From Diadema antillarum (Eukaryota): 64,000 bases of DNA. The DNA lies in NCBI RefSeq assembly GCF_040938485.1, contig NW_027271042.1, positions 930,001-994,000 on the forward strand. The letters run 5' to 3'. Within the stretch, counting starts at the first letter, position 1, and each line of letters opens with the position of its first letter. The position numbers were made by a program, and so were the translations under genes. Shown piece after piece: positions 2,517 through 45,255 of this stretch. The notes beneath the pieces were generated by a model. It saw nothing but the letters and a program-made list of their open reading frames with translations. It did not search any database and was not told the origin of the DNA.

Positions 2517-4100
2517 TTGTTATATATACGCACACGCAAAAAAGCCCTACAAAATATAGGAAGAAACGAAGGGCAATGGAATTTAAACAATCTTTCAACA
2601 TTTATAAGTAAAAAATAAAAAGAAATCAGTTTCATCTGTTTGAGCGATTTTGTATAAGGGAATTTCGCTATAGAATTTTAAGAAAAAGTTAATCATATCC
2701 AATAGTCGTTCTCACATGTATCGGTATTGAGATGTATTACGACGTATTCCCCTGACATTTTATCTTTCCTTCTTTTTGATCAACAGGAAATGTAGACGTC
2801 AGGAAGATTCAAATAAATCAGATACCCACTCATTGCGCTCTATCAATACCGATGCTCGCAAGGTGCATTGCTCTTTGCCGGAACGTCCACTCAACAAAAC
2901 AGGCGACGTCACAGTTAATCAGCAGAGCGAGGATCACGTCTACCAGAGCTCTGTAGAGGTGATCTCCGTTGATTATAATTATCGTTACGATAGTTGGTCG
3001 TTACTCTACGACCGAATTCTATGAAGTATTTAACTCTTTGTTTTATACCGCAAAATATTACTGACTTTAAAAATACACATTTCTCTTGTAGAACTTTCAT
3101 GTAAGGAATTTTTCCTCTTAAGTTCCCTAATAACTTAACTCATAAAGACGCCTATAATGGAGGGGTTTTGAAACATTCAAAAAAATAAAAAAATTTTCAA
3201 ACATCGTTTCATTTCAAATATAAAGTAGATGAAATTGGTATGAATTAGAGCTGCACTAAAATTTGTTTGATAAAGAGTTTTAAAAGAGTAGGCCTCGTGA
3301 TGTCATATTTTTCTTCACTGGATCTGGACGACACTCTTTATAGCAGCAAACATGTTGTATACACATTGTTCAGACACATTGTGTACCTATAGAATAAAAA
3401 TGAAAAGTCAATATCGGCAACCTGCATTAACATGCTTTCCTCTACTCATCGATTGCACTTGGCACAGGATCATAGTCATAAATCGGAATTGATCAACGAT
3501 CCAAAAGACTCGATTTCCCGGTCTCTCCAAGACTTCATACACCGAGATAGTACTGAAGACATCACGGAAGACATCGTGCAGTGTCAAGACACCACAGCCG
3601 ATGCCAAGAAAGGGCAATACATGAATGTGACAGAAAATGTGAAGAAAAAGAAAGGAGAAGTCAAGTTTGTTGAATGTATGGACTCGTCTGCAGCTGAAAA
3701 CGACGTTGATGAACACGGTTATTTGATTTCCAATGTAGGCATACGGAATGCTATGAATAGCGAACCTTCAGAAAACTTTGAAGATGGAAAGGCTCGTGAC
3801 AACTTTGACAGTGACCAATCTTTCGGAGAAGCAATGGGCAAAGGTTTAGTTAGGCATTCTAGACCAGGAGATAACAACGGTGCATGTGGGGTTACATACG
3901 AGGAGATTCCATCAACTTTGGACCAATCCGCGACCATCAGAGAACCGCCACTTGACCACGAGTACTCGACTATCGAGAGAAATAATGATTCTCATGCGAA
4001 GGGCATGAACAATGCTGTGTTTTCTGTTTCAATATCCTTAAGCAAGGACAGAGAAGAACACGAGTTGGACGAAAATGGGTATCTCCTTTTTGAAACATGA
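669..4100 (+). CDS. Receptor paralogue A, 3' part only (Sushi/CCP-like, TM, Tyr-rich tail); exons 1-5 presumably lie upstream of the window
   Basis: Exons with AG/GT boundaries and compatible phases: ex6 669-884 (SVGFWKHLGPVC...CGQSF...LLCVRLPGW...WNSSVPYC), ex7 2205-2310 (TM FIALIIGTPVCFAAMMLAILSIAWY), ex8 2787-2958, ex9 3468-4100 (stop TGA). Open throughout. Window position 1 matches the start of intron 5 in copies C/D. Confidence 0.85.
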
Positions 4101-11416: not shown

Positions 11417-14400
11417 AACAACGTTTTAGCAACGTTTCTCTGCCATATTTATGTTTCTAGTACTTGTAAAATAATTGTTATCATGTGTTTGTGTTTGTTT
11501 TTGATATTGGATACGGAGGTACCGAGGTATTAGCAGCCCACTACCCCGTCAGAAACAATTTTGAAAACCTCGAAGATTTGGATTGCATGCACACCCTACC
11601 TACTCTTTCGTGTCATCTACTTTTTGTTCACTTGCTCAAATCAGGAAGAAAACTTGCGAGCGAGCTCTGAATGAACATTGGCTCACGTAACAAGAAAGAA
11701 CTATTATTCAAATGAGGACTAACTCAGAACGCATTATAACAGTCCATGGATTGATTAATGTTTAATCGACAACAGTAATATACTGACTTACAACAAAATA
11801 CACGATTTCAAAAGTGATATCCGAAAAAGAAGTCTTGCCCTTAAATCTAATAACTTAAAACGGATAACTGATTGCAAACGTCCATAAGTTTATAATTTAT
11901 ATCATACCTATGTGACAGGAGAGGTGTCCATCCGTTTTCAGAATGGGGGAGGGGTAGGGGTGAAACAGAATGGATATCTTCGAGAAGGAGAAACAACTGA
12001 GCTGCAGCAGGGAAGGGAGGTGGACGGGATGGGGGATATAACCCTTTCCTACACGAGGGCCTTGCTGAAAATATAAATATCAAATATTTGTTTTAAAGCA
12101 TAATAAATGCGTAATCATTGATGGTAATGCTTGCAGCCATTTCTGATGACGTTATAATCATGATAAGACAAGTTTTGTGAAATTAGGCCTGCGAGAAAAG
12201 TTTAAGCATCTATACCAACATGTCACACAATTTACACTCACAGGTAAAACAATTAATGCTAGCCCAAATAGTGTAATTTCCCATCTTGGGAGCCATATTG
12301 GCGGTCATTCGGGAATGTAGTAACGGAAATATCAATATTAATCCTTTTTAAAAAGGCAGACCTAAACACAACATTAAATAAAAACCGGTACAGTCTAAAG
12401 CAACAAGTAGTTAATGGTAAGAGTATTGCTAATGAAATTAAAATCTAGCTTTTTAAAGCATAAAAAGACATGAAACAAAACAAAAATACAAACTGCCATA
12501 TTGAAAAAGAAAAACACTATTTATGAAACATGAAACAACAGCATTGGCACTGCTCACTTCTAGTTTAAAGGTAAAAGTATAAGTTCTCCTGTAAACGAAG
12601 GTTAGCATAAGGTAAAAAGTTAATAGTATAAAATATTACTTATTCTTAAACGATTGTCAAATCCTTATGTAGAGTATACTAGTACTCGTTTATTTTCAAG
12701 AGATACCATCGGTAAAGCTGGTTGGCGGATCCTCTCCCCTGGATGGCCTGGTGGTCCTGGAGTCAAACAGATATGTGTGCTATGATGGCTTTAACATCAA
12801 CGCTGCTGATTTAGTCTGCAGGGAGCACGGATTTCCAGCGGTAAAAGATTATTCGGCTAAACCTATTCCAAGTGCAGCTGCGTCAAAGAAAAATCGGCAA
12901 TTTTCATTTTATCAAGGTAACTGCAATGTTTAAGTATGCACTGATAATGTACTGCATAATATCACTGATATTTTCACTCCATGGTTGAATTCAGATGCAA
13001 AACGAAATAACAGATGATTATCTTAAAAACCTCTGTAATGCACCGAAATAGAATTGCACACTTTTTGATAACAATGTTGGACATACTCGAGTAAGTCTTG
13101 ACAGCGATCAGTGCAATGTGTTCTGGTATTTTTTTCCCCATATCCCCGATTCTCCTTTGCCAAATTTACATTGATATGAAGAAATGTTTATCATACCTCA
13201 GATTACCAATGTCGGAGTGCAAGTTTAAATGATTGCCTACGTGTATCTAAGGACACTGATTGTTTCTCGGACAGCGCTGTGAGAATCAGGTGCAGAGGTA
13301 AGATTAAAAATGAAAAGTGTAATGATACTGAATTACCGTACCACTGTACAGGTATATCATTTTTATTACCTCCGAGAGGTCATGTTTTCATTACCGTTGG
13401 TTTGTTCGTTCGTTCGTTTGTTTGTGTGCAAAATAACTCAAAAAGTAGTTAACAGATTGGGATGAAACTTGCAGGAAAGGTTGAGAATGACACAAGTAAC
13501 AAACGATTAATTTTGGTAGTCATCCGAGATTTTTGGGGAATTTATGAAGGATTTTTGATATTTTGGCAGGTAGGGTTAATGAACTTGGGAGTTCAGGCTG
13601 CACGTATTTGAGGTTTGCATGCGCGCACTAAAGTGCGTGCTCTAGTTTCTGCTGGGGAGAGGCGCGCCATGCAGCTGAGGGTTTATGACGTAACAAAGGC
13701 TTCTATATTGTGAAATCGGGCGACTTTCAGCACATGTTAATTTGTCATGCTATAAGTACGTATCTGCATTGTGCCGGGTGGAAATCACTGATACTGTATC
13801 TCTAATAGTCCAGGCGCAGGGACCCAGAAAAAATGACTTCGTTCAACCCACCCCGCAGAAAAGGTTTGACTGCATGGGGTGGTCGGTTGGACTCTCTGGA
13901 ACACCCCTAGGTAGTATGTGAGTCGAAATTGTGGTATCAATAAAATTTTACAGGCCATTTTAGTTGCGACAAGACCTTATTGTTCGAAAAAGAGTCTGCG
14001 CACGCCAAGACTACTACACGCACCACTAGCACTGCTACAGGCGCCAGTGCCAGTGGTGCGTGTAGTAGTCTTAGCGCACGCAGACTTTTTCCTCGGCAAA
14101 CAAGGGTTTTTGCCAGCAAACTCACTAGCTGGGGGCAGTGTAGTTTAGTTTCTAGCCGTTTTTATTTCGTGTATATTTTTTCCGAGTTGCAGCAAGCAGA
14201 GTGAGGTTGCATACCCAGTGATTGTGACCCCAAACCGTTCGGACGTCGCAATCACTTGGTATGCGCTTTCGCTCGGCTTAGCACAATAAAGTGGGCTTCT
14301 ACACATGCGCAAGCTGCAACTCGAAGAGATGAAAACGAAATAAAAACGACTAGAAACTAGACTGGGGTCGGTTACGGCTGGCACTGAAAATTACAACATA

Positions 14401-15258
14401 ATCACAGTTTTTGCAGTTATTTCATGAATAATTCCTCAAAACACCGTAAAACCATATGTTGCTAGAGATGTCAGCAAAACAATGGGATACATTGTAAGTT
14501 AAAATATTGTGCATGGTTACCATGGTAACCAGATGTATACAGGTGATTGATAATCCAAAAAATGCCTCCAACTGCTGCAAACTTTGGTATTTTTTGTTCA
14601 GTTTTTTTTTGTAGATAGGTGAATTAAAAACAAACATTTCTATTGATTATTGTTCAAAAAAGTTTTTTTCCTGTTGCCATGGCAACCAGTAATATCCAAT
14701 CAGGATTTAGCTGTCAATACTTAAGAACTAATGCCCATATTTTCAAAAAGCTCAATAAGCATGTCATTCTGCGTAATTGTACCATTTACAGTACTTTTAA
14801 CACATATTTGACTTCAAATTACAGGCAAATGTTGTTTCCAGCAATGTATAGACACAAAATTCCCTTCAAAATCTATGTTAATACAGAGAGCAAAGCCGAC
14901 GATATTCTGATATTAGCTTTTTAGAGTATAAATTTACAGAGAAATGGTTATTCGAAACAACCTTGGAAAAGAGCAGAAGAAAGCATTGATTGTTCTTGTT
15001 CTTAAAGGAAATTTATTCAAGACTGCAGATAAATTCCTTTCTAAAGAAGGAATATACACGTACACTGCATTATCCATCAATGGAATTAAAAGCGTACTTT
15101 TCGTTGGTAAACTATATATATTTGGACAACTTGTGGTGATATTTCATAATCAAGTTCGAATTACCAATTCTTTGTTAAATATGAATTCAATTTTTCATTT
15201 TTTGCTAAGCCTGTTACTAGAGCTCACAGTGTGATGGATTGACTTTCAGTACTTCGTT

Positions 15259-18671: not shown

Positions 18672-20484
18672 ATTGATGGATAATGCAGTGTACGTGTATA
18701 TTCCTTCTTTAGAAAGGAATTTATCTGCATTCTTGAATAAATTTTCTTTAAGAACAAGAACAATCAATTGCTTTCTTCTGCTCTTTTCCAAGGTTGTTTC
18801 GAATAACCATTTCTCTGCAAATTTATACTCTAAAAAGCTAATATCAGAATATCGTCGGCTTTGCTCTCTGTATTAACATAGATTTTGAAGGGAATTTTGT
18901 GTCTATACATTGCTGGAAACAACATTTGCCTGTAATTTGAAGTCAAATATGTGTTAAAAGTACTGTAAATGGTACAATTACGCAGAATGACATGCTTATT
19001 GAGCTTTTTGAAAATATGGGCATTAGTTCTTAAGTATTGACAGCTGAATCCTGATTGGATATTACTGGTTGCCATGGCAACAGGAAAAAACTTTTTTGAA
19101 CAATAATCAAAAGAAATGTTTGTTTTTAATTCACCTATCTACAAAAAAAAAAAACTGAACAAAAAATACCAAAGTTTGCAGCAGTTGGAGGCATTTTTTG
19201 GATTATCAATCACCTGTATACATCTGGTTACCATGGTAACCATGCACAATATTTTAACTTACAATGTATCCCATTGTTTTGCTGACATCTCTAGCAACAT
19301 ATATATATATATATATGGTTTTACGGTGTTTTGAGGAATTATTCATGAAATAACTGCAAAAAAACTGTTATTATGTTGTAATTTTCAGTGCCAGCCGTAA
19401 CCGACCCCAGTCTAGTTTCTAGTCGTTTTTATTTCGTTTTCATCTCTCCGAGTTGCAGCTTGCGCATGTGTAGAAGCCCACTTTATTGTGCTAAGCCGAG
19501 CGAAAGCGCATACCAAGTGATTGCGACGCCCGAACGGTTTGGGGTCACAATCACTGGGTATGCAACCTCACTCTGCTTGCTGTAACTCGGAAAAAATATA
19601 CACGAAATAAAAACGGCTAGAAACTAAACTACACTGACCTCAGCTAGTGAGTTTGTTGGCAAAAACCCTTGTTTGCCGAGGAAAAAGTCTGCGTGCGCTA
19701 AGACTACTACACGCACCACTGGCACTGGCGCCTGTAGCAGTGCTAGTGGTGCGTGTAGTAGTCTTGGCGTGCGCAGACTCTTTTTCGAACAATAAGGTCT
19801 TGTCGCAACTAAAATGGCCTGTAAAATTTTATTGATACCACAATTTCGACTCACATACTACCTGGGGGTGTTCCTGGAGGTCCCATCTACCACTCTGTGT
19901 GGTCAAACCTTTTCTGCGGGGTGGGTTGAACGATCTCCTTAATTAAGGCCCGTACAGGAATTAGTGCCTTGACTATAATGGAAGAACAATTTAGATCAGT
20001 GGTGGAATTGAGCTGCATGCTTAGCGGAGGTCTGCGCTCTCAGAGTGCTTCTCTAGTTTATTCATTTTTTTCAGGAGGTTACTGGTTCGTATGTACCATG
20101 TAACAAAATTTCTGTAGTAAAATCGTAGACTTCAAAGCCAAGACAAAATACTCTGAATGGAAGAAGGAGTGTTTGCTGACTAATGAGACGCTAATACATG
20201 TTAAAAAAATGGATAACATAAGAAACCCCGTCGGAATTATGAAGACTTTTTGTTTCGGCTGTCCGAAGCACCTCTTGTGTGTTTTTATGAAATGACATAC
20301 TGTTTTGCCCAACCCTGTGGACGCTTGACTCACAAAACCGAATAATTATCTTCTGTACTGCTGTTTGTCTCTCTACTGATGTTTCAACCGTTTGTGTGGC
20401 TTAAATTTTGGAAATGAATTGCAAAAATTATTTATCTTCATATCAAAGCGTCGAAAGACTTTGATGTACATTAATCAACATAAT

Positions 20485-27502: not shown

Positions 27503-27657
27503 NNNNNNNNNNNNNNNNNNNNNNNNNNNNNNNNNNNNNNNNNNNNNNNNNNNNNNNNNNNNNNNNNNNNNNNNNNNNNNNNNNNNNNNNNNNNNNNNNN
27601 NNNNNNNNNNNNNNNNNNNNNNNNNNNNNNNNNNNNNNNNNNNNNNNNNNNNNNNNN
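27503..27657. other. Assembly gap (N run) at the position of the intron-7 (TA)n microsatellite
   Basis: 155 Ns; copies A and C have (TA)n here (2477-2512, ~43630-43670). Confidence 0.95.
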
Positions 27658-30600
27658 AAATATCGGAAAAACGAAGGGCAATTGAATTTAAACAATCTTT
27701 CAACATTTGTAAGTAAAAAATAAAAATAAATCAGTTTCATCTGTTTGAGCGATTTTGTATAAGGGAATTTCGCTATAGAATTTTAAGAAAAAGTTAATCA
27801 TATCCAATAGTCGTTCTCACATGTATCGGTATTGAGATGTATTACGACGTATTCCCCTGACATTTTATCTTTCCTTCTTTTTGATCAACAGGAAACGTAG
27901 ACGTCAGGAAGATTCAAATAAATCAGATACCCACTCATTGCGCTCTATCAATACCGATGCTCGCAAGGTGCATTGCTCTTTGCCGGAACGTCCACTCAAC
28001 AAAACAGGCGACGTCACAGTTAATCAGCAGAGCGAGGATCACGTCTACCAGAGCTCTGTAGAGGTGATCTCCGTTGATTATAATTATCGTTACGATAGTT
28101 GGTCGTTACTCTACGACCGAATTCTATGAAGTATTTAACTCTTTGTTTCATGCCGCAAAATATTACTTTAGAAATATTTGACTTTGAAAATACAGATTTC
28201 TCTTGTAGAACTTTCATGTAAAGACTTTTTTCCTTTTAAGTTCCCTAATAACTTAACTCATAAAGACGCCTATAATGGAGGGGTTATGAAACATTCTAAA
28301 AAAAGAGACATTTTCAAACATCGTTTCATTTCAAATATAACGGAGATGAAATTGGTATGAATTAGAGCTGCATTAAAATTTGTTAGATAAAGAGCTTACA
28401 AGAGTAGGCCTCGTGATGTCATATTTTCACTAGCTCTGGATGTCAATCTTTATAACAGCAAACATGCTGTATACACATTGTTCAGACACATTATGTACCT
28501 ATAGAATTAAGTGAAAAGGCAGTATCGGCAATCGATACCATGCATTAACATGCTTTCCTCTACTATTCATTGCATTTGACACAGGGTCATAGTCATAAAT
28601 CGGAAGTAATCAACGACCCAAAAGACTCAATTCCCGGTCTCTCCATGACGTCCTACACCGAGACAGTACTCATGACATCACGGAAGACATCGCGCAGTGT
28701 CAAGACCCCACGGCCGATGCCGAGAAAGGACGGTACATGAACATGACCGAAAATGTGAAGAAAAAGGAGGGAGAAGTCAAGTTTGTTGATTGTAAGGACT
28801 CGTCTGCAGCTGAAAACGACGTTGATGAACACGGTTATTTAATTTCCAACGTAGATCCACGTAGAGCTACGAATAGCGAACTTCCAGAAAATGTTGAAAA
28901 TGAAAAGAATGAGGACAACTTTGACAGTATCCAATCACTCGGTGACGCAATGGGCGGAGGTTTAATCATCCATTCCAGACCAGCAGATAACGCTGGTAGA
29001 TGTGGGGTTACATACGAAGAGATTCCATCAACTTTGGGCCAATCCGCGACCATCAGAGAACCGCCACGTGACCACGAGTACTCCGCTATCGAGAGAAATG
29101 ATTCTCATGCAAAGGGCATGAACAATGCTCTGTATTCCGTTTCAATATCCTTAAGCAAAGAAAGAAAAGAGGACGAGTTGGACGAAAATGGGTATCTCCT
29201 TCTTGACACATGATTGCGCTGGTGAAATCATAAAAGATCAGAATGTGAACTGAGACAAAGTAGAATCCTCCCCCGCCCCCAAAAGCAGTCGAAGAACAAA
29301 TTAATTTTCACAGTCCAACGTGCTCAAAAGGTCAGATCAAAGGTACGAGAACAGTCCTGTTAAGTTTAACGAAGACCTCTGGAGAGGTTTTCTTTTCACC
29401 ATTCAGTTTGGACTACGAGGTGTCTAATGCATGGAAATTCTTAACTCCACCGTTGTATTTAATTCCTGAAGAAAAAGACAGTAAACTCGGCCCTGTGTGG
29501 TCTGTGAAATTTCATAGCTTTTAGGAGATACTTATTAATGTCCTGATTGATGATAGGGTATAAATTGACAAATATTCTTATCTCACTGCAAGAGTACATG
29601 TATCTTACAGTATGGCTGTGTCTTCGAAACCAAATCGTCTAAGAGGAATAAAATCTTTGTGGAATAGAAACGAGAATTTCTATTCCTCTTGAAGAATCAT
29701 TGCCGTGGCGGAGAAAAAAAAAATGGATTGAAGATAACAACAGCAAAAGTTGATTGGGAGCAGCTATAAGAGCAGCGGGAATGAATGACCAATAGGTTTA
29801 TTCACGTTGGAATAAATTATGAGGAATGCATTTGTGAAAATCACATGAACAGAATCTAATATGATATACGTTTATCTTTAAGATAATCTGAGTCACCTCT
29901 AAAAGTGTATTTCTTTGGTTGTGCCTCATACTTTGTATGGTTATTGTAAACTATTGTACACTTGAATGCTTGCTCGTCAATATCGTAGAAAAACAAGCTG
30001 TTACTAAAAAAAGAAACCATTAAGCGTTACTTTACTCGAAGTTTGCCTATTGCAAAAATTGGTATATCTGTAGTACCTACACAAATGTATGTTTACACTG
30101 CATATTCACCATATAGTTTACATTTGAATAAGCTTTAATAATGGTTGTAAAAATCGTAATTCTTTCATTACTAACATTGTTTATATTCTAATATGCATGT
30201 TTTTTTTAAACTCCTATAACTACATTCTGGTTATAGTCAAGAATGAAGCAATGTATATTAGGGTTCCGTTTCCACTTGTATATAGACGTATAGAGAGACT
30301 ACAATGTAAGATTTTTGTTATTGTAAGTAATACGACTGTACCATTACACTCATATATGTTATCATCCTCTCGCATGTACTGTACATAGTACCTTACACAC
30401 ACACACATCAAGTAAAATGTATACACTTAGTACATTTATACGTATGATGGAAGCATACGTGACACTACATGATGGCTTCATTTGATAATATGATCATGAT
30501 AATAATTGTTTTTTTTTTGTCTCTGAAATGATGAACTATAACAGCGAATAATACTATACCACCTTAGATTAAACGAATGCTTGAACAATATCGTCATGAT

Positions 30601-36309: not shown

Positions 36310-39300
36310 CGTTTTAGCAACGTTTCTCTGCCATATTTATGTTTCTAGTACTTGTAAAATAATTATTATCATGTGTTTGTGTTTGTTTTTGATATTGGAT
36401 ACGGAGGTACCGAGGTATTAGCAGCCCACTACCCCGTCAGAAACAATTTTGAAAACCTCGAAGATTTGGATTGCATGCACACCCTACCTACTCTTTCGTG
36501 TCATCTACTTTTTTGTTCACTTGCTCAAATCAGGAAGAAAACTTGCGAGCGAGCTCTGAATGAACATTGGCTCACGTAACAAGAAAGAACTATTATTCAA
36601 ATGAGGACTAACTCAGAACGCATTATAACAGTCCATGGATTGATTAATGTTTAATCGACAACAGTAATATACTGACTTACAACAAAATACACGATTTCAA
36701 AAGTGATATCCGAAAAAGAAGTCTTGCCCTTAAATTTAATAACTTAAAACGGATAACTGATTGCAAACGTCCATAAGTTTATAATTTATATCATACCTAT
36801 GTGACAGGAGAGGTGTCCATCCGTTTTCAGAATGGGGGAGGGGTAGGGGTGAAACAGAAGGGATATCTTCGAGAAGGAGAAACAACTGAGCTGCAGCAGG
36901 GAAGGGAGGTGGACGGGATGGGGGATATAACCCTTTCCCACACGAGGGCCTTGCTGAAAATATAAATATCAAATATTTGTTTTAAAGCATAGTAAATGCG
37001 TAATCATTGATGGTAATGCTTGCAGCCATTTCTGATGACGTTATAATCATGATAAGACAAGTTTTGTGAAATTAGGCCTGCGAGAAAAGTTTAAGCATCT
37101 ATACCAACATGTCACACAATTTACACTCACAGGTAAAACAATTAATGCTAGCCCAAATAGTGTACTTTCCCATCTTGGGAGCCATATTGGCGGTCATTCG
37201 GGAATGTAGTAACGGAAATATCAATATTAATCCTTTTTAAAAAGGCAGACCCAAACACAACATTAAATAAAAACCGGTACAGTCTAAAGCAAAAAGTAGT
37301 TAATGGTAGGAGTTTTGCTAATGAAATTAAAATCTAGCTTTTTAAAGCATAAAAAGACATGAAACAAAACAAAAATACAAACTGCCATATTAAAAAAGAA
37401 AAACCACTATTTATGAAACATGAAACAACAGCATTGGCACTGCTCACTTCTAGTTTAAAGGTAAAAGTATAAGTTCTGTAAACGAAGGTTAGCATAAGGT
37501 AAAAAGTTAATAGTATAAAATATTACTTATTCTTAAGAAACGATTGTCAAATCCTTATGTAGAGTATACTAGTACTCGTTTATTTTCAAGAGATACCATC
37601 GGTAAAGCTGGTTGGCGGATCCTCTCCCCTGGATGGTTTGGTGGTCCTGGAGTCAAACAGATATGTGTGCTACGATGGTTTTAACCTCAGAGCTGCTGAT
37701 TCAGTCTGCAGAGAACTCGGCTTCCCAGCGGTAAAAGATTACTCGGCTCAACCTATTCCAAGTGCAGCTGCGTCAAAGAAAAATCAACGATTTTCACTTT
37801 ATCAAGGTAACTGCAATTATGCACTGATAATGCACTGGATATATCACTGATATTTTCACTCCATGTCTTGAATTCAGATGCAAAACGAAATAACAAGTGA
37901 TTATCTTAAAAACCTCTAGATGCACCGTAATGAAATTGTAAATTATTTTGATAACAATGTTGGACACACTCGAGTTAAGTCTTGACAGCGATCAGTGCAA
38001 TGGGTTCTTGTGTTCTTTTCCCCATATCCCCGATTCTCCTATGCCAAATTTACAGTGATATGAAGAAATATTTATCATACTTCAGGTTATAAATGTCGGA
38101 GTGCAAGATTTAAAGATTGCCTACGTGTATCTAACGACACTGCCTGTTTCTCGGACAACGCTGTGAGAATCAGGTGCAGAGGTAAGATTGAATATGAGAA
38201 GTGTAATGATATTGAATTATATTATTTTTCTTTTTTCATTTTTTTCAGGAGGTTAATGGTTTATATGTACCATGTAACCAAATTTCTGTGATATAATCGT
38301 AGACTTCAAAGTCATGACAAAATACTCTGAATGGAAGAAGGAGTATTAACTTGCTGGCTAATGAGACACTAATCACCAGGTGGGTTGGGAGGATGGCCTG
38401 AGGGCCCAAGTCATTTAGTTGGCTCATTCCAAACCCAGGCTGCCCAACCTGGTGCACCCTTACCACTCAAGTGTATGTTCTGATTTCGAAATATGTACTA
38501 TGAAATTTGTGAATGAAAGCCGAATTAATAATAATAATAATAATAATAATAATGATAATAATCCATGTAAAAAACTAGATATCTCGCTACGGCGACTGAT
38601 ATGCCTCCGCCATAATGCATGGTTCTCCATAGGTCTATAGTACAATGTCTTGACAATGTGTGATGACAGTTTCACACAATTGGCAAAATATTAAAATGAC
38701 AGGTTTGACACAAATGTGCTGAATGTTCACTTTCCTAGAACTAGGTTCAATTGGATGAATGATTAAAATGTTAGAGTGCAGGTATTTGGGGAACTGATGA
38801 TATTTACTTGACTTTTGACCCTTTTATAAGTTTATGCATTGAGTAATTTTCAAGGTATTGAGAAAAAGTATAATTTCAGTATCAAATGGGAAAACAGCAT
38901 TATCTATCCCTGGTCTTTGACCTTTGACCTCACAGTTCCAAAGAGGATCACTGTTAGGTTGAACATGCATAAATATGTAAGTTTCACGATGATACCTTGA
39001 GTTACTTTTGAGATATGGAGGAAAAAATGCAATTCAGCACTTTCACTTGACCTTTGACCTTTTGACCTTTGACCTTTTGGCAAGAAACTTCCCACAGAAT
39101 ATATATTGGGTAATACATGTATACATCAAGTTTAAAAAAAAACCTTCAGGCATTGCATAAATATAAGGAAAGTAGTGATATTTTGAGGAGTTGACCTTGA
39201 CCTTTGACCCCTGACCTTTGAACCATGACCCCCAACTTCCCTCGATAATCACTGCCCATTGGAACAAGCATATATACTAAGTTCCATGAAGATACCTTCA

Positions 39301-42300
39301 ACCATTTGCGAGATATGGAGAAAAACATGAATTTTAACCTTTTTTTCACTAAATAACCTGTGACCTTTGACCTTTGACCCCGTGACCCTAAAATCCAAAC
39401 AAAGTATTATCCCCTAGGATATACCCTCATACCAAGTTTGATGTAAAACCACCACACGGTTCTTGAGATATCGACAAAAACAAAACGGGACGGACGTACG
39501 GACGTACGGACGTACGGACGGACGGACGTACGTACGTACGGACGGACGTACGTACGTACGGACGGACGGACAACTCGAAAACATAATGCCTCCTGCCACT
39601 TCGTTGGCGGAGGCATAAAAATAAGTTGGATAAGATAAGACACCCCTTGTCAGAATTATGAAGACTTATTGTTTCGGCTGTACGGAGCACCCTTTTTGTG
39701 TTGTTTTGAAATGACATACTGTTTTGCCCATCCTTGTGGACGCTTGACTTCCTCTTAATTACCAAACCGAACATTATCTTGCTGTACTGCTGTTTGTCTC
39801 TCTACTGTTGTTTCAACCTTTTTTGTGGAATAAATTTTGGAAATGAATTGCAAAATTATTTATATTCATATCAAAGCGTCGAAAGACTTTTATGTACTCT
39901 AAGCAACATGATTATGCCAATGATATATTTGACTTTTCAACGCAATGCAATCATAATGGACACATGTCAATACAACCTAAACTTGGGTCGGTTTGACAAC
40001 ATGATAGAAAAGATTATACTCTGCTGTGTGTGTGTATGTGTGTGTGCGTGTGTGTGGAATAAAACGTGCAAACAAACAAAATCACTCTGACTAGCGTGCA
40101 CCATCATTCTCAAATAATTTGTCTTACAAGGTGCGTGCTATGCTCTGAAGTAAGGAGGGATTTTTTATGTTAAGTTCATGCTCGGTTAATCCTTTGTATC
40201 GCTTTTTGGAGTTATGATTTATAATTAAAAGGAGAAAAAGTTTCGTCAAACTAAAGCACTTAACGTGTTAGACAAAACAGTCTCACTTTGAAAAAAAAAC
40301 AAAAACTTTTTCCATCACATCTAAACAGCTAAACAGTGAGAACAAATCCCATTCTATAACATACACATAGCAGAGAAATTTTTATTTCAGTTTACATCAC
40401 AACTATCAAAACATATGCACAAACATTTGAAACTCAAATGACGAGATTGTTTGCCAGGGTTTAAAGGATTGAAGTTGACATCAATTCAAGATCTGTGTCT
40501 AATTTGCCTTTTATGAGTCTCGCCCTCCTCGTGCCATTCGTTAGTGCGAAGACATGCCCGTCATACATCCATGTTCATTACAAGTTTGCAAAACTCCTTC
40601 GTCTTTACGACTTGATCGGTCCGTTCCGTAGCTTAAATCTTCAGAACCTATTTATCAGGTTTATGATGTTTAAAATGTAACTGATCTAAATGAAAGCACC
40701 TCTTCTCTGAAGGTTACGAGTTTGCTTTTTAATTCTACTTCAACAATCGGGAATTTATGAAGGAAAAAAAATAACACCGAGAAAATGTCAGATGAGATGA
40801 TCAGAAACTATAAGGAACAAGAAATAGCTTACAGATTTTAATTATGTCATTCTACATTTCCGCAGAACCTGGATTTCTCGGATGCTACGTAGGCGATCAT
40901 CGTACTTTTCAGGATTTGGACGTTTCCAGCTTTAACGTTCATTCTGATGAAGAGTGTGTGTCAATCTGTAGATGGAAAAGTGGAAACCATGACATTGCTA
41001 TCGTTAAGGAAAGAAATTGCACATGTTATCAATCAGAAGAGTATGCTAACTTCAGTTCTTGCGTGAACAATACTCCTTACTGGACACCTCAAACAAAGGC
41101 AAAACCAGGCCAGGAAGTCCAGTGCTTGTATAACCGTGAGTATCACAGTAGTATCACCCAGTGTCACACATGAAAGGTTAAGAAACGTTTCCTGTTCTCA
41201 ATATTTTTCTCAATATAGCGTTATGATTGATGATGTTCATGTAGAAGTACTGTTTTTCAGTATTACCCTCGCTGATTCACCACTGCTTCTGGCATACAAT
41301 ACTATATTTTTAGTTCTTCAACAAGCATTATTATCACTATCTGATGTAAAGTGAACTGTTATCATAATTGTTTTAATATTTCAATCAGTTGGAACAAGGC
41401 TAAATTACTCAACCTTGAATTCTCATACTCCACACGTTGTTAAAGAAGAAACACCTTTTATTACATTTTGGAAAGTAATTTTGTATTTTCGGTGTTTTTA
41501 AAACAAAGTAACATGTTATTTCCTTTTTTATTTCTCATAGTACACACAGTAGTATCTTCTTTAATTCTCTATGTCTATAATAAATGTGTGATCACCCAAG
41601 TCATGGGTTAAATGTTTACTTGGACGACATTATCAGAAGATCTCGCCATTAAAAAAAGTCTAAATTGTAAAGGCAGTTAAGTCAGCAATGACAGAGATAG
41701 CTCATGTACACAGTTTGAAGATGATTGCATTATGCTTTTTTCATCCCAATTGTTTTGATACTTCGTGTTTTTTTAATGTCCTTAAATCTGTTTATCTGAA
41801 TCGTGACTTTTTTTTCCTTTATCGAAAGTTTCTGTTGGATTTTGGAAGCATCTCGGTCCTGTGTGTAAAGAGTTTTTGGATCATAATATTATGAGCTTTG
41901 GATCAGACATAATCAATTGTGGTCAGAGTTTCTCCAGCATCAGCAGCGCAAACCTTCTGTGTGTGAGACTACCTGGATGGTCGACTTATTTCCCGGTTTG
42001 GAACGCGTCAGTCCCGTATTGCCGGGCAGAAGATGATGCAACAAACGGTCTGTCTTACTTAGTTAGTTAAAAATATGTCATACTTTAGCTCAAAGCAAAC
42101 ACATTTTTAAAGCTTATTAGTCAGAGTAGCGAAAGACGCAATAGCTCATCTTGATTGAGAAGACTGAACCGTATTAGCTGGCATCATGATTCTGGGATTT
42201 GACGACAGATACTCCGTACACTATCTCCATCCCAAAAGAAAAGGAGAGAAGATTAAAAAGACGAATAGAAGAAAAGAAAATTTCAACCAAAAGTCTGGAG

Positions 42301-43633
42301 AGCACAATTATGATAATAAATAGAGCTCAATAGTCTTGTTTCAAGACCTTGTTCACTAATACTCAACGTTTAGACACTGACTAAATTATTAAGTAATTCG
42401 TTCCTTCTATCATTACTATTTGATTGGATATTGATTAACATGATATTATTTCTAACACGAATTAAGTGGTAGCCAAAATACGACGGAGTTGGTTGCTAAC
42501 AGATGCAGCATAATCGAGGGGAGGGGGCACTTCAGCTCTTCCCACGCTCCCTCAAAAGAAAAAAAAAGAAGAAGAAAAACGTATGACAAAAAAAATATGC
42601 ATTGTCGGAGAAACTGTTAAATATGGTAAAAAAGGTTGAATTATAAATCTGATATACTTTTTGTGGCAAATATTAGACGGATAAAATCTTTAGCTAGAAA
42701 CACAGGACAGGAGTGTAGATATACGTCATCTTACTGTATAAGATGGTCATATAGTTTAAGAAAATAATGATAAGCGACCGTATGGTGACGTGTAGACTTG
42801 CAGAAAATAATCCGTTATCTTCAGCATAAATTGACCTTTATCCATCCAAAAGCTACATTATACTGTTGCACGAACTTCATAAAATTAATTGCCACAAAAT
42901 TGCATTTTAATCAAATTTTCATGACCCCTGATCGTGACCCATGGCTCAACTTTCACCACTGTCATTTCATGCAACTAATGTTGCATTCTGAATATTAAAT
43001 CTTCTTATTAAGTATTATTTTATGTCGATATTCCGAGCTAGAATTGTGGCTGGAAATTGCAATTAGATTAAAGAACAGTGACGGGGGGTCCTGACTTTAG
43101 ATCTCTGAGCACTATCTGTTCAATGCAAAAAAGGTCAATTAATATTGTACAATGTCCACCATCTAAATCCAATCTGGGCATACGTCTTATGTTGCTTGCC
43201 TTGACCGAGAACTATATGAACATCCACTGTTTGTCTGTTTGTTTTTACGAAATATACTTTACAAAAACTTAACAAAGGATTGCGGTCTCGTGTTTCCAGG
43301 TAACAAAGTTTGATTTCGTGACGAAGGTTCTATCTGATGTATCATTTTCTGTTTCTTTAGGCCTGGAGACAAAATTCATTGCACTAATTATTGGAGCCCC
43401 TGTCTGTTTCGCAGCCATGATGCTTGCCATTTTATCTATTGCATGGTACATCCATCAGTGGAAAAAGTGAGTGCGACGATAATCAACTTTTTTTTAGTAT
43501 CTTCGTGTGTGTGTGTTTCCATATAGGTACCATGTGAATTACGTTTTGCAAGTATTGATTTTAACCGAAAGGACGTACACACAATTTCAGATAAATGTTT
43601 ATCTATTACTGCCCCGAACTCTGCTCTGTATAG

Positions 43634-43671
<38 letters not shown>

Positions 43672-45255
43672 CAGTTGTTATATATACACACACGCAAAAA
43701 AAACCTACAAAATATAGGAAGAAACGAAGGGCAATGGAATTTAAACAATCTTTCAACATTTGTAAGTAAAAAATAAAAAGAAATCAGTTTCATCTGTTTG
43801 AGCGATTTTGTATAAGGGAATTTCGCTATAGAATTTTAAGAAAAAGTTAATCATATCCAATAGTCGTTCTCACATGTATCGGTATTGAGATGTATTACGA
43901 CGTATTCCCCTGACATTTTATCTTTCCTTCTTTTTGATCAACAGGAAACGTAGACGTCAGGAAGATTCAAATAAATCAGATACCCACTCATTGCGCTCTA
44001 TCAATACCGATGCTCGCAAGGTGCATTGCTCTTTGCCGGAACGTCCACTCAACAAAACAGGCGACGTCACAGTTAATCAGCAGAGCGAGGATCACGTCTA
44101 CCAGAGCTCTGTAGAGGTGATCTCCGTTGATTATAATTATCGTTACGATAGTTGGTCGTTACTCTACGACCGAATTCTATGAAGTATTTAACTCTTTGTT
44201 TTATACCGCAAAATATTACTGACTTTAAGAATACACATTTCTCTTGTAGAACTTTCATGTAAAAAATTTTTCCTCTTAAGTTCCCTAATAACTTAACTCA
44301 TAAAGACGCCTATAATGGAGGGGTTTTGAAACATTCTAAAAAATAAAGACATTTTCAAACATCGTTTTATTTCAAATATAAAGTACATGAAATTGGTATG
44401 AATTAGAGCTGTACTAAAATTTGTTTGATAAAGAGTTTTAAAAGAGTAAGCCTCGTGATGTCATATTTTTCTTTACTGGATCTGGACAACACTCTTTATA
44501 GCAGCAAACATGTTGTATACACATTGTTCAGACACATTGTGTACCTATAGAATAAAAGTGAAAAGTCAATATCGGCAACCTGCATTAACATGCTTTCCTC
44601 TACTCATCGATTGCATTTGGCACAGGATCATAGTCATAAATCGGAATTGATCAACGATCCAAAAAACTCGATTTCCCGGTCTCTCCAAGACTTCATACAC
44701 CGAGATAGTACTGAAGACATCACGGAAGACATCGTGCAGTGTCAAGACACCACAGCCGATGCCAAGAAAGGGCAATACATGAACGTGACAGAAAATGTGA
44801 AGAAAAAGAAGGGAGAAGTCAACTTTGTTGAATGTATGGACTCGTCTTCAGCTGAAAACTACGTTGATGAAAACGGTTATTTGATTTCCAACGTAGATCC
44901 ACGTAGAGCTACGAATAGCGAACTTCCAGAAAATTTTGAAAATGAAAAGAATGAGGACAACTTTGACAGTGTCCAATCACTCGGTGAAGCAAAGGGCAGA
45001 GGTTTAATCATCCATTCCAGACCAGCAGATAACGCTGGTAGATGTGGGGTTACATACGAAGAGATTCCATCAACTTTGGACCAATCCGCACCCATCAGAG
45101 AACCGGCACGTCACCATGAGTACTCGACTATCGAGAGAAATGATTCTCATGCGAAGGGCATGAATAATGCTCTGTATTCTGTTTCAATATCCTTAAGCAA
45201 AGAAAGAGAAGAGGACGAGTTGGACGAAAATGGGTATCTCCTTCTTGAAACATGA
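35243..45255 (+). CDS. Receptor paralogue C, complete: SP-CUB-SRCR-WSC-Sushi-TM-Tyr-motif tail, 700 aa
   Basis: Exons 35243-35327, 35659-35967, 37591-37806, 38086-38181, 40866-41135, 41829-42047, 43361-43466, 43945-44116, 44626-45255. Sum 2103 nt = 700 codons + stop; all introns GT-AG; no internal stops. An alternative ex1 donor 12 nt upstream has the same phase. Confidence 0.88.
35659..35967 (+). CDS. Exon 2 of copy C: degenerate CUB-like domain
   Basis: SIWVIKAPPGRRFLIEV matches the CUB CxWxIxAPxGxxIxLxF segment. VTVLSLTHEIKVRVHG and NFKMNV match the C-terminal CUB strands. Phase 1-1. Paralogues at 10766-11074 and 52131-52439. Confidence 0.6.
37591..38181 (+). CDS. Exons 3-4 of copy C: group A-type SRCR domain (6 Cys, split over two exons)
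   Basis: VKLVGGSSPLDGLVVL...VCYDGFNLRAADSVCRELGF follows the SRCR VRLVGG...VCDDxW...A.VVCRxLGF pattern. Exon 4 CRSARFKDC...ACFSDNAVRIRC follows C.G.E..L..C...C.H..DAGVxC. Confidence 0.85.
38573..39620 (-). mobile_element. Helentron/HINE (DINE-1-like) element in C intron 4
   Basis: On the - strand: TTTTATGCCTCCGCC...GGCAGGAGGCA 5' inverted repeat, (CCGT/ACGT)n microsatellite, TGACCTT repeats, 3' GGCGGAGGCAT plus hairpin TCGCCGTAGCGA plus CTAGTT. Absent in B (empty site ~20197-20214). Confidence 0.7.
40866..41135 (+). CDS. Exon 5 of copy C: WSC-like domain
   Basis: FLGCYVGD...EECVSIC...AIVKERNCTC...C matches WSC YLGCYxD...xxCxxxC...AG...xCxC. The protein sequence in copy D (57482-57751) is identical. 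Confidence 0.7.
41829..42047 (+). CDS. Exon 6 of copy C: Sushi/CCP-like domain
   Basis: Four Cys, and FGSDIINCGQSF...ANLLC...WNASVPYC follows the CCP FGxxVxYxCxxGF...LxC...WxxxxPxC pattern. Paralogues at 669-884 and 58436-58654. Confidence 0.6.
43361..43466 (+). CDS. Exon 7 of copy C: transmembrane helix
   Basis: FIALIIGAPVCFAAMMLAILSIAWY (uncharged) followed by the basic stop-transfer run WKKKRRR across exon 8. Confidence 0.85.
43945..45255 (+). CDS. Exons 8-9 of copy C: acidic, low-complexity cytoplasmic tail with Tyr motifs and no catalytic domain
   Basis: HVYQ, QYMNV, DENGYLISN, VTYEEI, EYSTI, ALYSV, DENGYLLLET-stop; conserved across paralogues. Confidence 0.8.

What the first reader, a model, noticed from the sequence alone, without database searches (positions are those of the whole stretch)
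43945..45255. Cytoplasmic tail is a conserved multi-phosphotyrosine scaffold (ITIM-like pair, Grb2-type site, duplicated DE[N/H]GYL)
Seen in A, C, D (and out of frame in B): YMNV or YMNM; DE[H/N]GYLISN and a C-terminal DENGYL(L/I); VTYEEI or IVYEEI; and YSTI exactly 22 residues after the YEEI tyrosine in every copy, while the spacers diverge. A has lost one Tyr (NAVFSV vs NALYSV), C has gained one (ENYVDE), D has gained one (SIYSS). Known: (I/V/L/S)xYxx(I/L/V) is the ITIM consensus, pYEEI is the optimal Src-SH2 ligand, and YxN binds Grb2. Inference: paralogues may differ in which SH2 effectors they recruit (SHP2-type vs Src/Grb2).
Basis: partly seen in the sequence, partly recalled or inferred. 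Interest (0 to 1): 0.7.

Follow-up and report, generated by a model that had tools for sequence, protein, structure and literature searches.

The report
Tyrosine-motif tail of sea-urchin SRCR receptors
The flagged stretch encodes the disordered cytoplasmic tail of one of four tandem SRCR/Sushi membrane-receptor genes of the sea urchin Diadema antillarum, and its tyrosine motifs are the best-conserved positions across a large tail family found so far only in Diadema, so it is probably a phosphotyrosine docking or sorting scaffold, though no biochemistry supports this yet.

Summary
Partly confirmed. One polarity is wrong: SIYSS in D is the ancestral state, lost in A, B and C.

Within the window's own cluster the motifs are not measurably better kept than the spacers (p=0.44), and these tails are recombinant mosaics.

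The genome holds at least 157 matches to this tail exon, down to about 30% identity. In that deep family the tyrosine columns are the slowest sites (0.86 vs 0.52 conservation, p=5e-5; tree-aware p=9e-5). The 22-residue spacing holds in 29 of 32 tails.

The family consensus is YMDM (PI3K-type). The Grb2-type YMN(V/M) is a local derivative. DExGYLxL resembles a hemITAM, and Y(E/Q)(E/D)I matches the signalling motif of vertebrate WC1/CD163c-alpha SRCR co-receptors.

Some relatives repeat the C-terminal module 12 or more times in one exon. A profile search of 1.84 billion proteins found 27 hits; all 10 looked up are Diadema.

AlphaFold predicts a disordered tail. No phosphorylation, binding or expression data could be obtained. 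An earlier scan note (s1-208734) flagged a similar receptor cluster on another piece of this genome.

The parts
43361..43466 (+). Copy C transmembrane exon. A hydrophobic span (FIALIIGAPVCFAAMMLAILSIAWYI) is followed by HQWKK. The exon ends two bases into a codon, before a GTGAGT donor.
   Evidence: The acceptor follows a polypyrimidine tract at 43359-60. The same junction appears in the RefSeq family models P0004 and P0005.
43945..44116 (+). Copy C first cytoplasmic exon. It holds a basic stop-transfer KRRRQ and the tyrosine in HVYQSS (44093-44110; HIYQN in relatives).
   Evidence: The AG acceptor and GT donor are conserved in A-D. The exon is identical in B and 99% identical in A.
44626..45255 (+). 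Copy C last exon: 209 codons plus the stop. Motif positions: YMNV 44776-87, ENYVDE 44854-71, DENGYL 44866-83, VTYEEI 45049-66, YSTI 45121-32, NALYSV 45166-83, DENGYL 45223-40.
   Evidence: AlphaFold2 predicts no secondary structure (mean pLDDT 52.5).
2787..2958 (+). Copy A first cytoplasmic exon.
3468..4100 (+). Copy A last exon: YMNV, DEHGYLISN, VTYEEI, YSTI, NAVFSV (Tyr to Phe) and DENGYLLF.
27892..28063 (+). Copy B first cytoplasmic exon, identical to that of C.
28585..29213 (+). Copy B last exon, 629 nt. A 1-bp deletion near 28631 gives a stop at 28738 in the acceptor frame. All motifs lie out of frame and YSTI reads YSAI. Probable pseudogene.
60892..61063 (+). Copy D first cytoplasmic exon (HVYQNS).
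61503..62135 (+). Copy D last exon: YMNM, DENGYLISN, IVYEEI, YSTI, ALYSVSIYSS (the ancestral double Tyr) and DENGYLIL.
37563..42067 (+). Copy C ectodomain exons that place the tail on a receptor: SRCR (about 37584-37814), WSC-like (about 40865-41086) and Sushi (about 41807-42049).
   Evidence: Pfam SRCR scores 25 bits on the split exon. The annotated relatives P0011, P0012 and P0025 map collinearly on these exons. Full-length relatives carry SRCR and Sushi domains.

Best explanation
The region encodes the roughly 270-residue, intrinsically disordered cytoplasmic tail of a type-I SRCR/WSC-like/Sushi membrane receptor of Diadema antillarum. The tail is one member of a large family, found so far only in Diadema, whose shared element is a string of short tyrosine-centred linear motifs.

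Family consensus, in order:
- HIYQN
- YMDMSG
- DENGYL(I/L)SNV
- (I/V)YE(E/D)IPS
- a YxxI tyrosine exactly 22 residues after the YE(E/D)I tyrosine
- PLYSVSIYSSK
- DENGYLVLE
- in most members, a further YV(N/E/D)M, LYE(N/D) and (T/V)(V/I)YESIP

Most likely mechanism (inferred, not shown):
1. Ligand-driven clustering of the ectodomains lets Src-type kinases phosphorylate these acid-flanked tyrosines.
2. The phosphotyrosines then dock SH2 proteins.
3. YE(E/D)I would dock a Src-family kinase. Together with the +22 YxxI it could dock a tandem-SH2 SHP-type phosphatase.
4. YMxM would dock PI3K p85.
5. YxN would dock Grb2/Drk.
6. DExGYLxL would dock a Syk-type kinase, in the manner of a hemITAM.

The window's copies A-D carry a shortened tail that stops right after the second DENGYL. 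Their YMDM has changed to YMN(V/M). They differ among themselves by blocks shuffled through recombination.
For: Shown here:
- Gene structure and membrane topology fit a TM exon followed by a tail.
- At least 157 genomic matches to the tail exon were found, and nearly all of those listed have an open frame.
- In 32 tails of 30-76% identity, Tyr columns have mean top-residue frequency 0.86 against 0.52 elsewhere (Mann-Whitney p=5.5e-5; none of 100,000 permutations reached it). The +3 position scores 0.80.
- Tree-aware Fitch counts on 79 tails give 5.4 changes at Tyr columns against 13.4 elsewhere (p=9e-5). The slowest columns all lie in D-E-x-G-Y-L-x-L, Y-M-D-M-S-G and D-E-N-G-Y.
- Tyr is the best-conserved residue class.
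- The 22-residue spacing holds in 29 of 32 tails.
- The C-terminal module is amplified 12 or more times in one 1394-aa open frame holding 68 Tyr.
- AlphaFold2 predicts disorder: pLDDT 52.5, pTM 0.16, with only the two DENGYL motifs reaching 73-80.
- The genome encodes candidate readers. Two SH2 exons plus a PTP exon lie collinear on C495. Two SH2 exons plus a Tyr-kinase exon lie collinear on C1524. Several SH2-kinase loci also exist.

From the literature:
- Phosphorylation of YEEL in WC1 is required for its signalling, and all CD163c-alpha-like SRCR receptors share Y(Q/E)(D/C/E)(I/L) (PMC2906472).
- Dectin-1 has DEDG followed by a hemITAM that signals through Syk (PMC11624271).
Against: - There is no direct evidence of expression, phosphorylation or SH2 binding.
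- Within the close cluster the motifs are no less variable than the spacers (p=0.44).
- dN/dS among A-D is only 0.52-0.66.
- In 17 nearest D. setosum / D. antillarum pairs, Tyr columns differ 10.6% against 15.9% elsewhere (p=0.078).
- All the motifs also fit tyrosine- or dileucine-based sorting signals.
- ITIM and YxN consensus matches are common by chance.
- The candidate SHP-type and Syk-type genes were inferred only from exon collinearity.
Confidence: 0.68

Rival explanations
1. The conserved motifs are mainly trafficking signals rather than phosphotyrosine docking sites. YxxPhi motifs (YEEI, YSTI, YLVL, YMDM) would bind the AP-2 mu2 subunit in unphosphorylated form. E-N-G-Y-L-(L/I) would act as an acidic dileucine signal [DE]xxxL[LI]. 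Together they would drive endocytosis and lysosomal delivery of ligand, as expected for scavenger receptors.
For: - Every conserved Tyr motif fits YxxPhi.
- Both DENGYL copies of A-D fit [DE]xxxL[LI].
- The ectodomain is scavenger-receptor-like.
- CD163A carries a tyrosine-based tail motif, YREM. PMC2906472 says it is unknown whether that motif is phosphorylated, and cites work on the endocytic properties of CD163 tail variants.
Against: - A dileucine signal does not need the near-invariant G and Y at its x positions (G 0.95, Y 0.88).
- The family consensus YLVLE has V, not L or I, at the second position.
- Seven to seventeen sorting signals per tail, and 12-fold module arrays, are hard to explain by sorting alone.
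- Acidic residues upstream of the Tyr and the exact YEEI and YMDM matches are typical kinase and SH2 grammar.
- The two roles are not exclusive.
Confidence: 0.17
2. There is no specific function. The motifs of A-D look conserved only because the four copies are recent duplicates homogenised by gene conversion, and this cluster may be decaying.
For: - Motif columns are as variable as spacers in the close cluster.
- dN/dS is 0.52-0.66.
- B is frameshifted.
- The neighbouring copy E has DEHGHL, and A has lost a Tyr.
- The tails are mosaics of three segment types.
- A-D lack the C-terminal extension that most relatives have.
Against: - Deep-family conservation of the same columns is strong.
- A, C and D keep open frames and intact splice sites.
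- The D. setosum orthologue P0001 keeps all six last-exon Tyr motifs.
Confidence: 0.1
3. The YEEI / YSTI pair is a canonical ITAM for a Syk-type kinase.
For: Both are YxxI motifs at a fixed spacing.
Against: The tyrosines lie 22 residues apart. An ITAM has 6-12 residues between its two YxxL/I motifs (established definition). This spacing is that of tandem ITIM/ITSM pairs bound by SHP-type phosphatases (my recollection of PZR, PECAM-1 and PD-1, not checked here).
Confidence: 0.03

Closest known systems
WC1 / CD163c-alpha (SCART) multigene SRCR co-receptors of vertebrate gamma-delta T cells
   Same: - Type-I receptors with SRCR ectodomains, encoded by tandem multigene arrays.
- Their tails share a Y-(Q/E)-(D/C/E)-(I/L) motif whose phosphorylation (YEEL in WC1) is required for signalling (PMC2906472).
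- The Diadema family has Y-(E/Q/H)-(E/D)-I at a conserved position.
   Different: - No detectable sequence homology between the tails. The profile search returned 27 proteins, and the 10 looked up are all Diadema.
- The Diadema ectodomain has one SRCR plus WSC-like, Sushi and CUB-like modules, not long SRCR arrays.
- The Diadema tail has many more Tyr motifs.
- Common descent and convergence cannot be told apart.
hemITAM of Dectin-1 / CLEC-2 (DEDG followed by YxxL)
   Same: The most conserved element of the family is D-E-x-G-Y-L-x-L. It has the same acidic pair, Gly, Tyr and +3 Leu. Some members read DEDGYLL. Dectin-1 has 'DEDG followed by a hemITAM' that signals via Syk (PMC11624271).
   Different: - The third acid is usually N or H.
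- The motif lies at the C-terminus of a type-I receptor, not the N-terminal tail of a type-II C-type lectin.
- It occurs twice per tail. The internal copy has Ser at +3, and copy A has Phe at +3.
- Syk binding is untested.
CD28 YMNM and PDGFR/IRS-type YMxM sites
   Same: - Copies B and D read YMNM, a combined YxN (Grb2) and YxxM (p85) site like that of CD28 (my knowledge).
- The family consensus YMDM fits the p85 SH2 YMxM rule.
   Different: A and C read YMNV and so lose the +3 Met. The context is unrelated and no binding data exist.
CD5 / CD6 (SRCR receptors with long multi-tyrosine tails acting as signalling scaffolds)
   Same: An SRCR ectodomain joined to a long disordered tail with many docking tyrosines (my knowledge of CD6 and CD5; not checked in a paper here).
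   Different: No sequence relation was detected. CD5 and CD6 are single genes, not a family with more than 150 tail-exon matches.
Tandem ITIM/ITSM receptors (PECAM-1, PZR, SIRP-alpha, PD-1)
   Same: A (V/I)xYxxI site is followed by a second YxxI at a fixed 22 residues. That distance suits a tandem-SH2 phosphatase (spacing shown; comparison from my knowledge). An SHP-type gene is present in the genome.
   Different: The second site lacks the ITIM/ITSM residue at -2. The ectodomain is not of the immunoglobulin superfamily.

Membership tests
ITIM | (I/V/L/S)-x-Y-x-x-(I/V/L) | tested here: met
   VTYEEI in A, B and C; IVYEEI in D. 51 of 60 family tails hold at least one such match. A shuffled tail gives one 30% of the time.
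ITIM | The second site of the 'pair' also fits the consensus | tested here: not met
   HEYSTI and HDYSTI have H or D at -2. It is a plain YxxI.
ITIM | Phosphorylation-dependent recruitment of SHP-1/2 or SHIP | not testable with these tools
   Only the presence of an SHP-type locus is shown (two SH2 exons plus a PTP exon on C495).
ITSM | T-x-Y-x-x-(V/I) | tested here: not met
   Not present in A-D. TVYESI occurs only in the C-terminal extension of other family members.
ITAM | Two YxxL/I motifs separated by 6-12 residues | tested here: not met
   The tyrosines lie 22 residues apart in 29 of 32 tails.
Grb2 SH2 site | Y-x-N | tested here: met
   YMNV/YMNM in A-D, and HVYQNS in D. The family consensus and the D. 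setosum orthologue read YMDM, so the site is derived.
PI3K p85 SH2 site | Y-x-x-M (YMxM) | tested here: inconclusive
   Met in B and D (YMNM) and in 50 of 60 family tails. Not met in A and C (YMNV).
Src-family SH2 optimal ligand | pY-E-E-I | tested here: met
   Exact YEEI in A-D. Expected in 0.4% of shuffled tails. Phosphorylation is untested.
hemITAM | Acidic DEDG patch immediately before a single YxxL | tested here: inconclusive
   The C-terminal DENGYLLL (B, C) and DENGYLIL (D) fit except for N in place of the third acid. A has F at +3. The internal DE(H/N)GYLIS has S at +3. The D, E, G, Y, L and L columns are 0.88-0.95 conserved.
hemITAM | Syk recruitment by dimerised receptors | not testable with these tools
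   Only a candidate tandem-SH2 tyrosine-kinase locus on C1524 was seen.
WC1/CD163c-alpha SRCR co-receptors | SRCR ectodomain plus a Y(Q/E)(D/C/E)(I/L) motif in the tail | tested here: met
   SRCR exon in copy C and SRCR in full-length relatives. YE(E/D)I in 53 of 60 tails. Motif definition from PMC2906472.
WC1/CD163c-alpha SRCR co-receptors | Detectable sequence homology of the cytoplasmic domain | tested here: not met
   The profile search of 1.84 billion representatives gave 27 hits, and the 10 looked up are all Diadema. The word search with a full-length member gave 60 hits, all Diadema.
Acidic dileucine sorting signal | [DE]-x-x-x-L-[LI] | tested here: met
   E-N/H-G-Y-L-I and E-N-G-Y-L-L/I in A-D. 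The family consensus of the second copy is YLV, a weaker fit.

The most novel reading that the evidence does not exclude
D-E-x-G-Y-L-x-L is an invertebrate hemITAM-type module. On this reading a single acid-flanked YxxL recruits a Syk-type tandem-SH2 kinase to clustered SRCR receptors, and in some Diadema genes it has been multiplied into arrays of 12 or more units. Together with the WC1-like Y(E/Q)(E/D)I site, this would mean that SRCR co-receptor signalling through Src/Syk-type kinases either predates the echinoderm-vertebrate split or was reinvented with nearly the same motif grammar.
Probability: 0.15. Interest if true: 0.8.

Novelty: new variant of a known kind. Interest (0 to 1): 0.58.

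Why it matters
Sea urchins have very large innate-immune receptor repertoires, but how their SRCR receptors signal is largely unknown.

This work defines a concrete, testable signalling tail:
- It is shared by dozens of SRCR/Sushi receptor genes in Diadema.
- Its motif grammar closely parallels vertebrate immunoreceptors: Src-type YEEI, PI3K-type YMDM, a hemITAM-like DExGYLxL, and a fixed 22-residue tyrosine pair.
- It shows natural variation: motif loss and gain, block shuffling, truncation and 12-fold module arrays. These variants could serve as ready-made mutants.

Diadema antillarum is a keystone reef grazer that suffered mass die-offs in 1983-84 and 2022 (PMC13511894). Its recognition-receptor families are therefore of practical interest. 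The proof comes from the wider family.

Tried and rejected
- Pfam on the tail exons gave nothing significant (Uteroglobin, E=0.078).
- The ESM Atlas feature search gave no usable lead (best score 0.78).
No expression or splice-junction evidence was obtained.
- An IQ-TREE site-rate run first failed on the thread count and then timed out. It was replaced by FastTree plus Fitch parsimony.
- The shallow tests were not significant: close cluster p=0.44 and 17 cross-species nearest pairs p=0.078.
- The ITAM reading was rejected on spacing.
- A literature search for DENGYL hit only e-mail addresses.
- Searches for sea-urchin SRCR with ITIM, and for coelomocyte Syk/SH2, found nothing relevant.
- Complex prediction was not used. 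The proposed binding depends on phosphotyrosine, which it cannot model, and the candidate SH2 partners are unspliced multi-exon genes.
Full report
**What is in the window**

The window is G000:C154:930001-994000 of a 1.75-Gb assembly in 2963 contigs. Three lines of evidence identify the species as Diadema antillarum.
- The tail of locus L016 is identical to the RefSeq protein P0002 of D. antillarum.
- The contig lengths attached to D. antillarum XP_ models equal those of G000 contigs.
- A preprint describes a 1.73-Gb, 2,964-scaffold D. antillarum assembly (10.64898/2026.05.24.727502).

A self-comparison shows four tandem repeat units. Each ends in a homologous last exon:
- A, 3468-4100
- B, 28585-29213
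- C, 44626-45255
- D, 61503-62135

The flagged interval 43945-45255 is exactly the last two exons of copy C plus the intron between them.
- The TM exon (43361-43466) ends two bases into a codon, before a GTGAGT donor.
- Base 43945 completes that codon.
- The exon 43945-44116 ends in phase 0.
- The last exon starts in phase 0 after a CAG acceptor.

The same junctions are used in RefSeq models of relatives. The hydrophobic span followed by HQWKKKRRRQ places the roughly 270 residues downstream in the cytoplasm. This is an inference from the positive-inside rule.

Upstream exons of copy C encode SRCR, WSC-like and Sushi modules. The annotated relatives P0011, P0012 and P0025 map collinearly on them.

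**Checking the observation**

- YMNV in A and C; YMNM in B and D.
- DE(H/N)GYLISN in all four.
- VTYEEI in A, B and C; IVYEEI in D.
- YSTI with its Tyr exactly 22 residues after the YEEI Tyr. B reads YSAI.
- NALYSV, which reads NAVFSV in A.
- A C-terminal DENGYL(L/I) followed directly by the stop.

Copy B's last exon is one base short. The acceptor frame stops after 51 codons at 28738, so every motif is out of frame.

- The Phe in A is a loss.
- The Tyr in ENYVDE of C is a gain. The family has Asp there.
- SIYSS in D is the ancestral state, with Tyr in 79% of tails and in the D. setosum orthologue. A, B and C lost it.

Consensus matches by themselves are weak evidence. Shuffled copies of the C tail contain an ITIM consensus 30% of the time and YxN 50% of the time. 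YEEI appears in 0.4% and DExGYxx(L/I) in 0.15%.

**Is the conservation more than recency?**

Within the cluster the answer is no. Nine close tails were compared: A-D, a fifth copy just outside the window at C154:1006635, three copies on contig C558, and the D. setosum protein P0001.
- 16 of 36 motif columns vary, against 83 of 175 other columns (p=0.44).
- dN/dS among A-D is 0.52-0.66.
- The intron upstream of the last exon is 97% identical between A and C, while the exon has dS 0.15.

The protein alignment shows why. The tails are mosaics of three N-terminal, two middle and three C-terminal block types, recombined in different combinations. The Tyr differences travel with the blocks.

The decisive evidence comes from the wider family.
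- A six-frame search of the genome with the C tail finds at least 157 matches, down to about 30% identity. Nearly all of those listed have open frames of 200-350 codons.
- The count is inflated by unmerged haplotypes. Many hits come in near-identical pairs on two contigs.

Three tests on diverged tails agree.
1. In an alignment of 32 tails at 30-76% identity (A2), the seven Tyr columns have mean top-residue frequency 0.86 against 0.52 for the rest. Mann-Whitney gives p=5.5e-5, and none of 100,000 random column sets reached it. The +3 position averages 0.80.
2. Tyr is the best-conserved residue class.
3. A tree-aware count (FastTree plus Fitch parsimony on 79 tails under 97% identical, from both Diadema species) gives 2-9 changes at Tyr columns, mean 5.4, against a mean of 13.4 elsewhere (p=9e-5). 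The slowest columns are D, E, G, Y, L and L of the terminal motif, Y, M, D, M, S and G, and D, E, G and Y of the internal motif.

The 22-residue distance holds in 29 of 32 tails.

Between 17 nearest D. setosum / D. antillarum pairs, Tyr columns differ 10.6% against 15.9% elsewhere. This is a trend only (p=0.078).

**What the family looks like**

The consensus tail is given under Best explanation. Most members continue past the second DENGYL with YV(N/E/D)M, LYE(N/D) and (T/V)(V/I)YESIP.
- Last exons of family members hold 5-17 Tyr. The window's copies hold 5-7 there, or 6-8 in the last two exons together.
- The window's copies stop directly after the second DENGYL, as does the D. setosum orthologue P0001.
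- The Grb2-type YMN(V/M) is therefore a local derivative of a PI3K-type YMDM. P0001 still reads YMDM.

In two loci (L066 on C134 and L067 on C578) a single open frame of 1394 or 874 codons repeats the C-terminal module 12 or more times. One unit runs through EY(A/V)NI, NDPLYSTSIY and ELD(A/E)NGYLVLE. The longer frame holds 68 Tyr. RefSeq models P0006, P0007 and P0023 show 6-9 such stretches.

Full-length models carry SRCR and/or Sushi domains.

**Structure**

AlphaFold2 on the tail, using the family alignment, gives mean pLDDT 52.5 and pTM 0.16 with no helices or sheets. Only the two DENGYL motifs rise to pLDDT 73-80, each with a small beta-bridge around the N-G turn.

**Taxonomic range**

- A profile of the 32 tails searched against 1.84 billion representative proteins returned only 27 hits. 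The 10 looked up are all D. antillarum or D. setosum.
- Word searches with the tail and with a full-length member (60 hits) also returned only Diadema.
- Fast-evolving disordered tails may escape detection in other echinoids, so 'restricted to Diadema' means 'as far as HMMER can see'.

**Mechanism**

What is shown: a disordered, acid-rich tail whose constrained positions are tyrosines and their +1 to +3 neighbours, at fixed spacing, on a receptor with a scavenger-type ectodomain.

What is inferred: phosphorylation by Src-type kinases and docking of SH2 proteins.

The genome encodes plausible readers.
- Two SH2 exons and a tyrosine-phosphatase exon lie collinear on C495, with an allelic copy on C644. 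This suggests an SHP-type gene.
- Two SH2 exons and a tyrosine-kinase exon lie collinear on C1524. This is a Syk-type candidate, but the SH2 exons are 22 kb apart.
- Several SH2-kinase loci are also present.

The motif grammar has documented vertebrate parallels.
- WC1 and all CD163c-alpha-like SRCR receptors share Y(Q/E)(D/C/E)(I/L), and phosphorylation of WC1's YEEL is needed for signalling (PMC2906472).
- Dectin-1 has DEDG followed by a hemITAM that signals through Syk (PMC11624271).

The main rival is that these are YxxPhi and acidic-dileucine sorting signals for an endocytic receptor. This is not excluded and may coexist with signalling. However, the near-invariant Gly-Tyr inside the putative dileucine signal and the 12-fold module arrays fit docking better.

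**Comparison and novelty**

No paper found here describes this family or its tail. It is a new variant of a known kind: an immunoreceptor-style tyrosine-motif tail on a multigene SRCR receptor family. It is closest in logic to WC1/CD163c-alpha and CD5/CD6, but no sequence homology to their tails was detected.

An earlier scan note on another piece of this genome (s1-208734) independently flagged a similar receptor cluster with tyrosine-motif tails.

**Limits**

- Exons were searched one at a time by reference.
- The candidate SH2 partners were not assembled, and no complex prediction was attempted.

Noticed in passing
L066 (G000:C134:641800-647000, minus strand) and L067 (G000:C578:188000-192000, minus strand): Single open frames of 1394 and 874 codons hold 12 or more tandem copies (about 68 aa each) of the C-terminal tail module (EY(A/V)NI, NDPLYSTSIY, ELD(A/E)NGYLVLE). 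They hold 68 and 42 tyrosines. They are probably two haplotypes of one gene.
   Followed up: partly
window 3468-4100, 28585-29213, 44626-45255, 61503-62135; also L002, L003, L006, L008: The tails of the cluster are mosaics of three N-terminal, two middle and three C-terminal block types in different combinations. For example, one C558 copy combines a C-like start with a D-like end. The A-C intron is 97% identical, but the adjacent exon has dS 0.15. This points to gene conversion or unequal crossing-over inside the last exon.
   Followed up: partly
G000:C154:1006635-1007261 (L002) and G000:C154:908166-908777 (L011), just outside the window: The tandem array continues beyond the window. A fifth close copy lies downstream (89% identical to C, with DEHGHL, so a Tyr to His change in the first motif). 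A diverged member (55%) lies upstream.
   Followed up: partly
window 13839-15081 and 18672-19933: A 1.26-kb inverted repeat at 96% identity lies in the spacer between copies A and B. It may be the arms of a mobile element.
   Followed up: no
window 27503-27657 and 52718-52873: Two runs of N (155 and 156 bases). These are assembly gaps or masked stretches. They were left untouched.
   Followed up: no
G000:C495:42172-61953 (+) and G000:C1524:521753-549170 (+): Collinear SH2-SH2-PTP exons suggest an SHP-type phosphatase. Collinear SH2-SH2-tyrosine-kinase exons suggest a Syk-type candidate. These are possible readers of the tail motifs.
   Followed up: partly
window 43600-43700: A TA-rich microsatellite lies in the intron between the TM exon and the first cytoplasmic exon of copy C. 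It reads as YIYIYI in translation.
   Followed up: no
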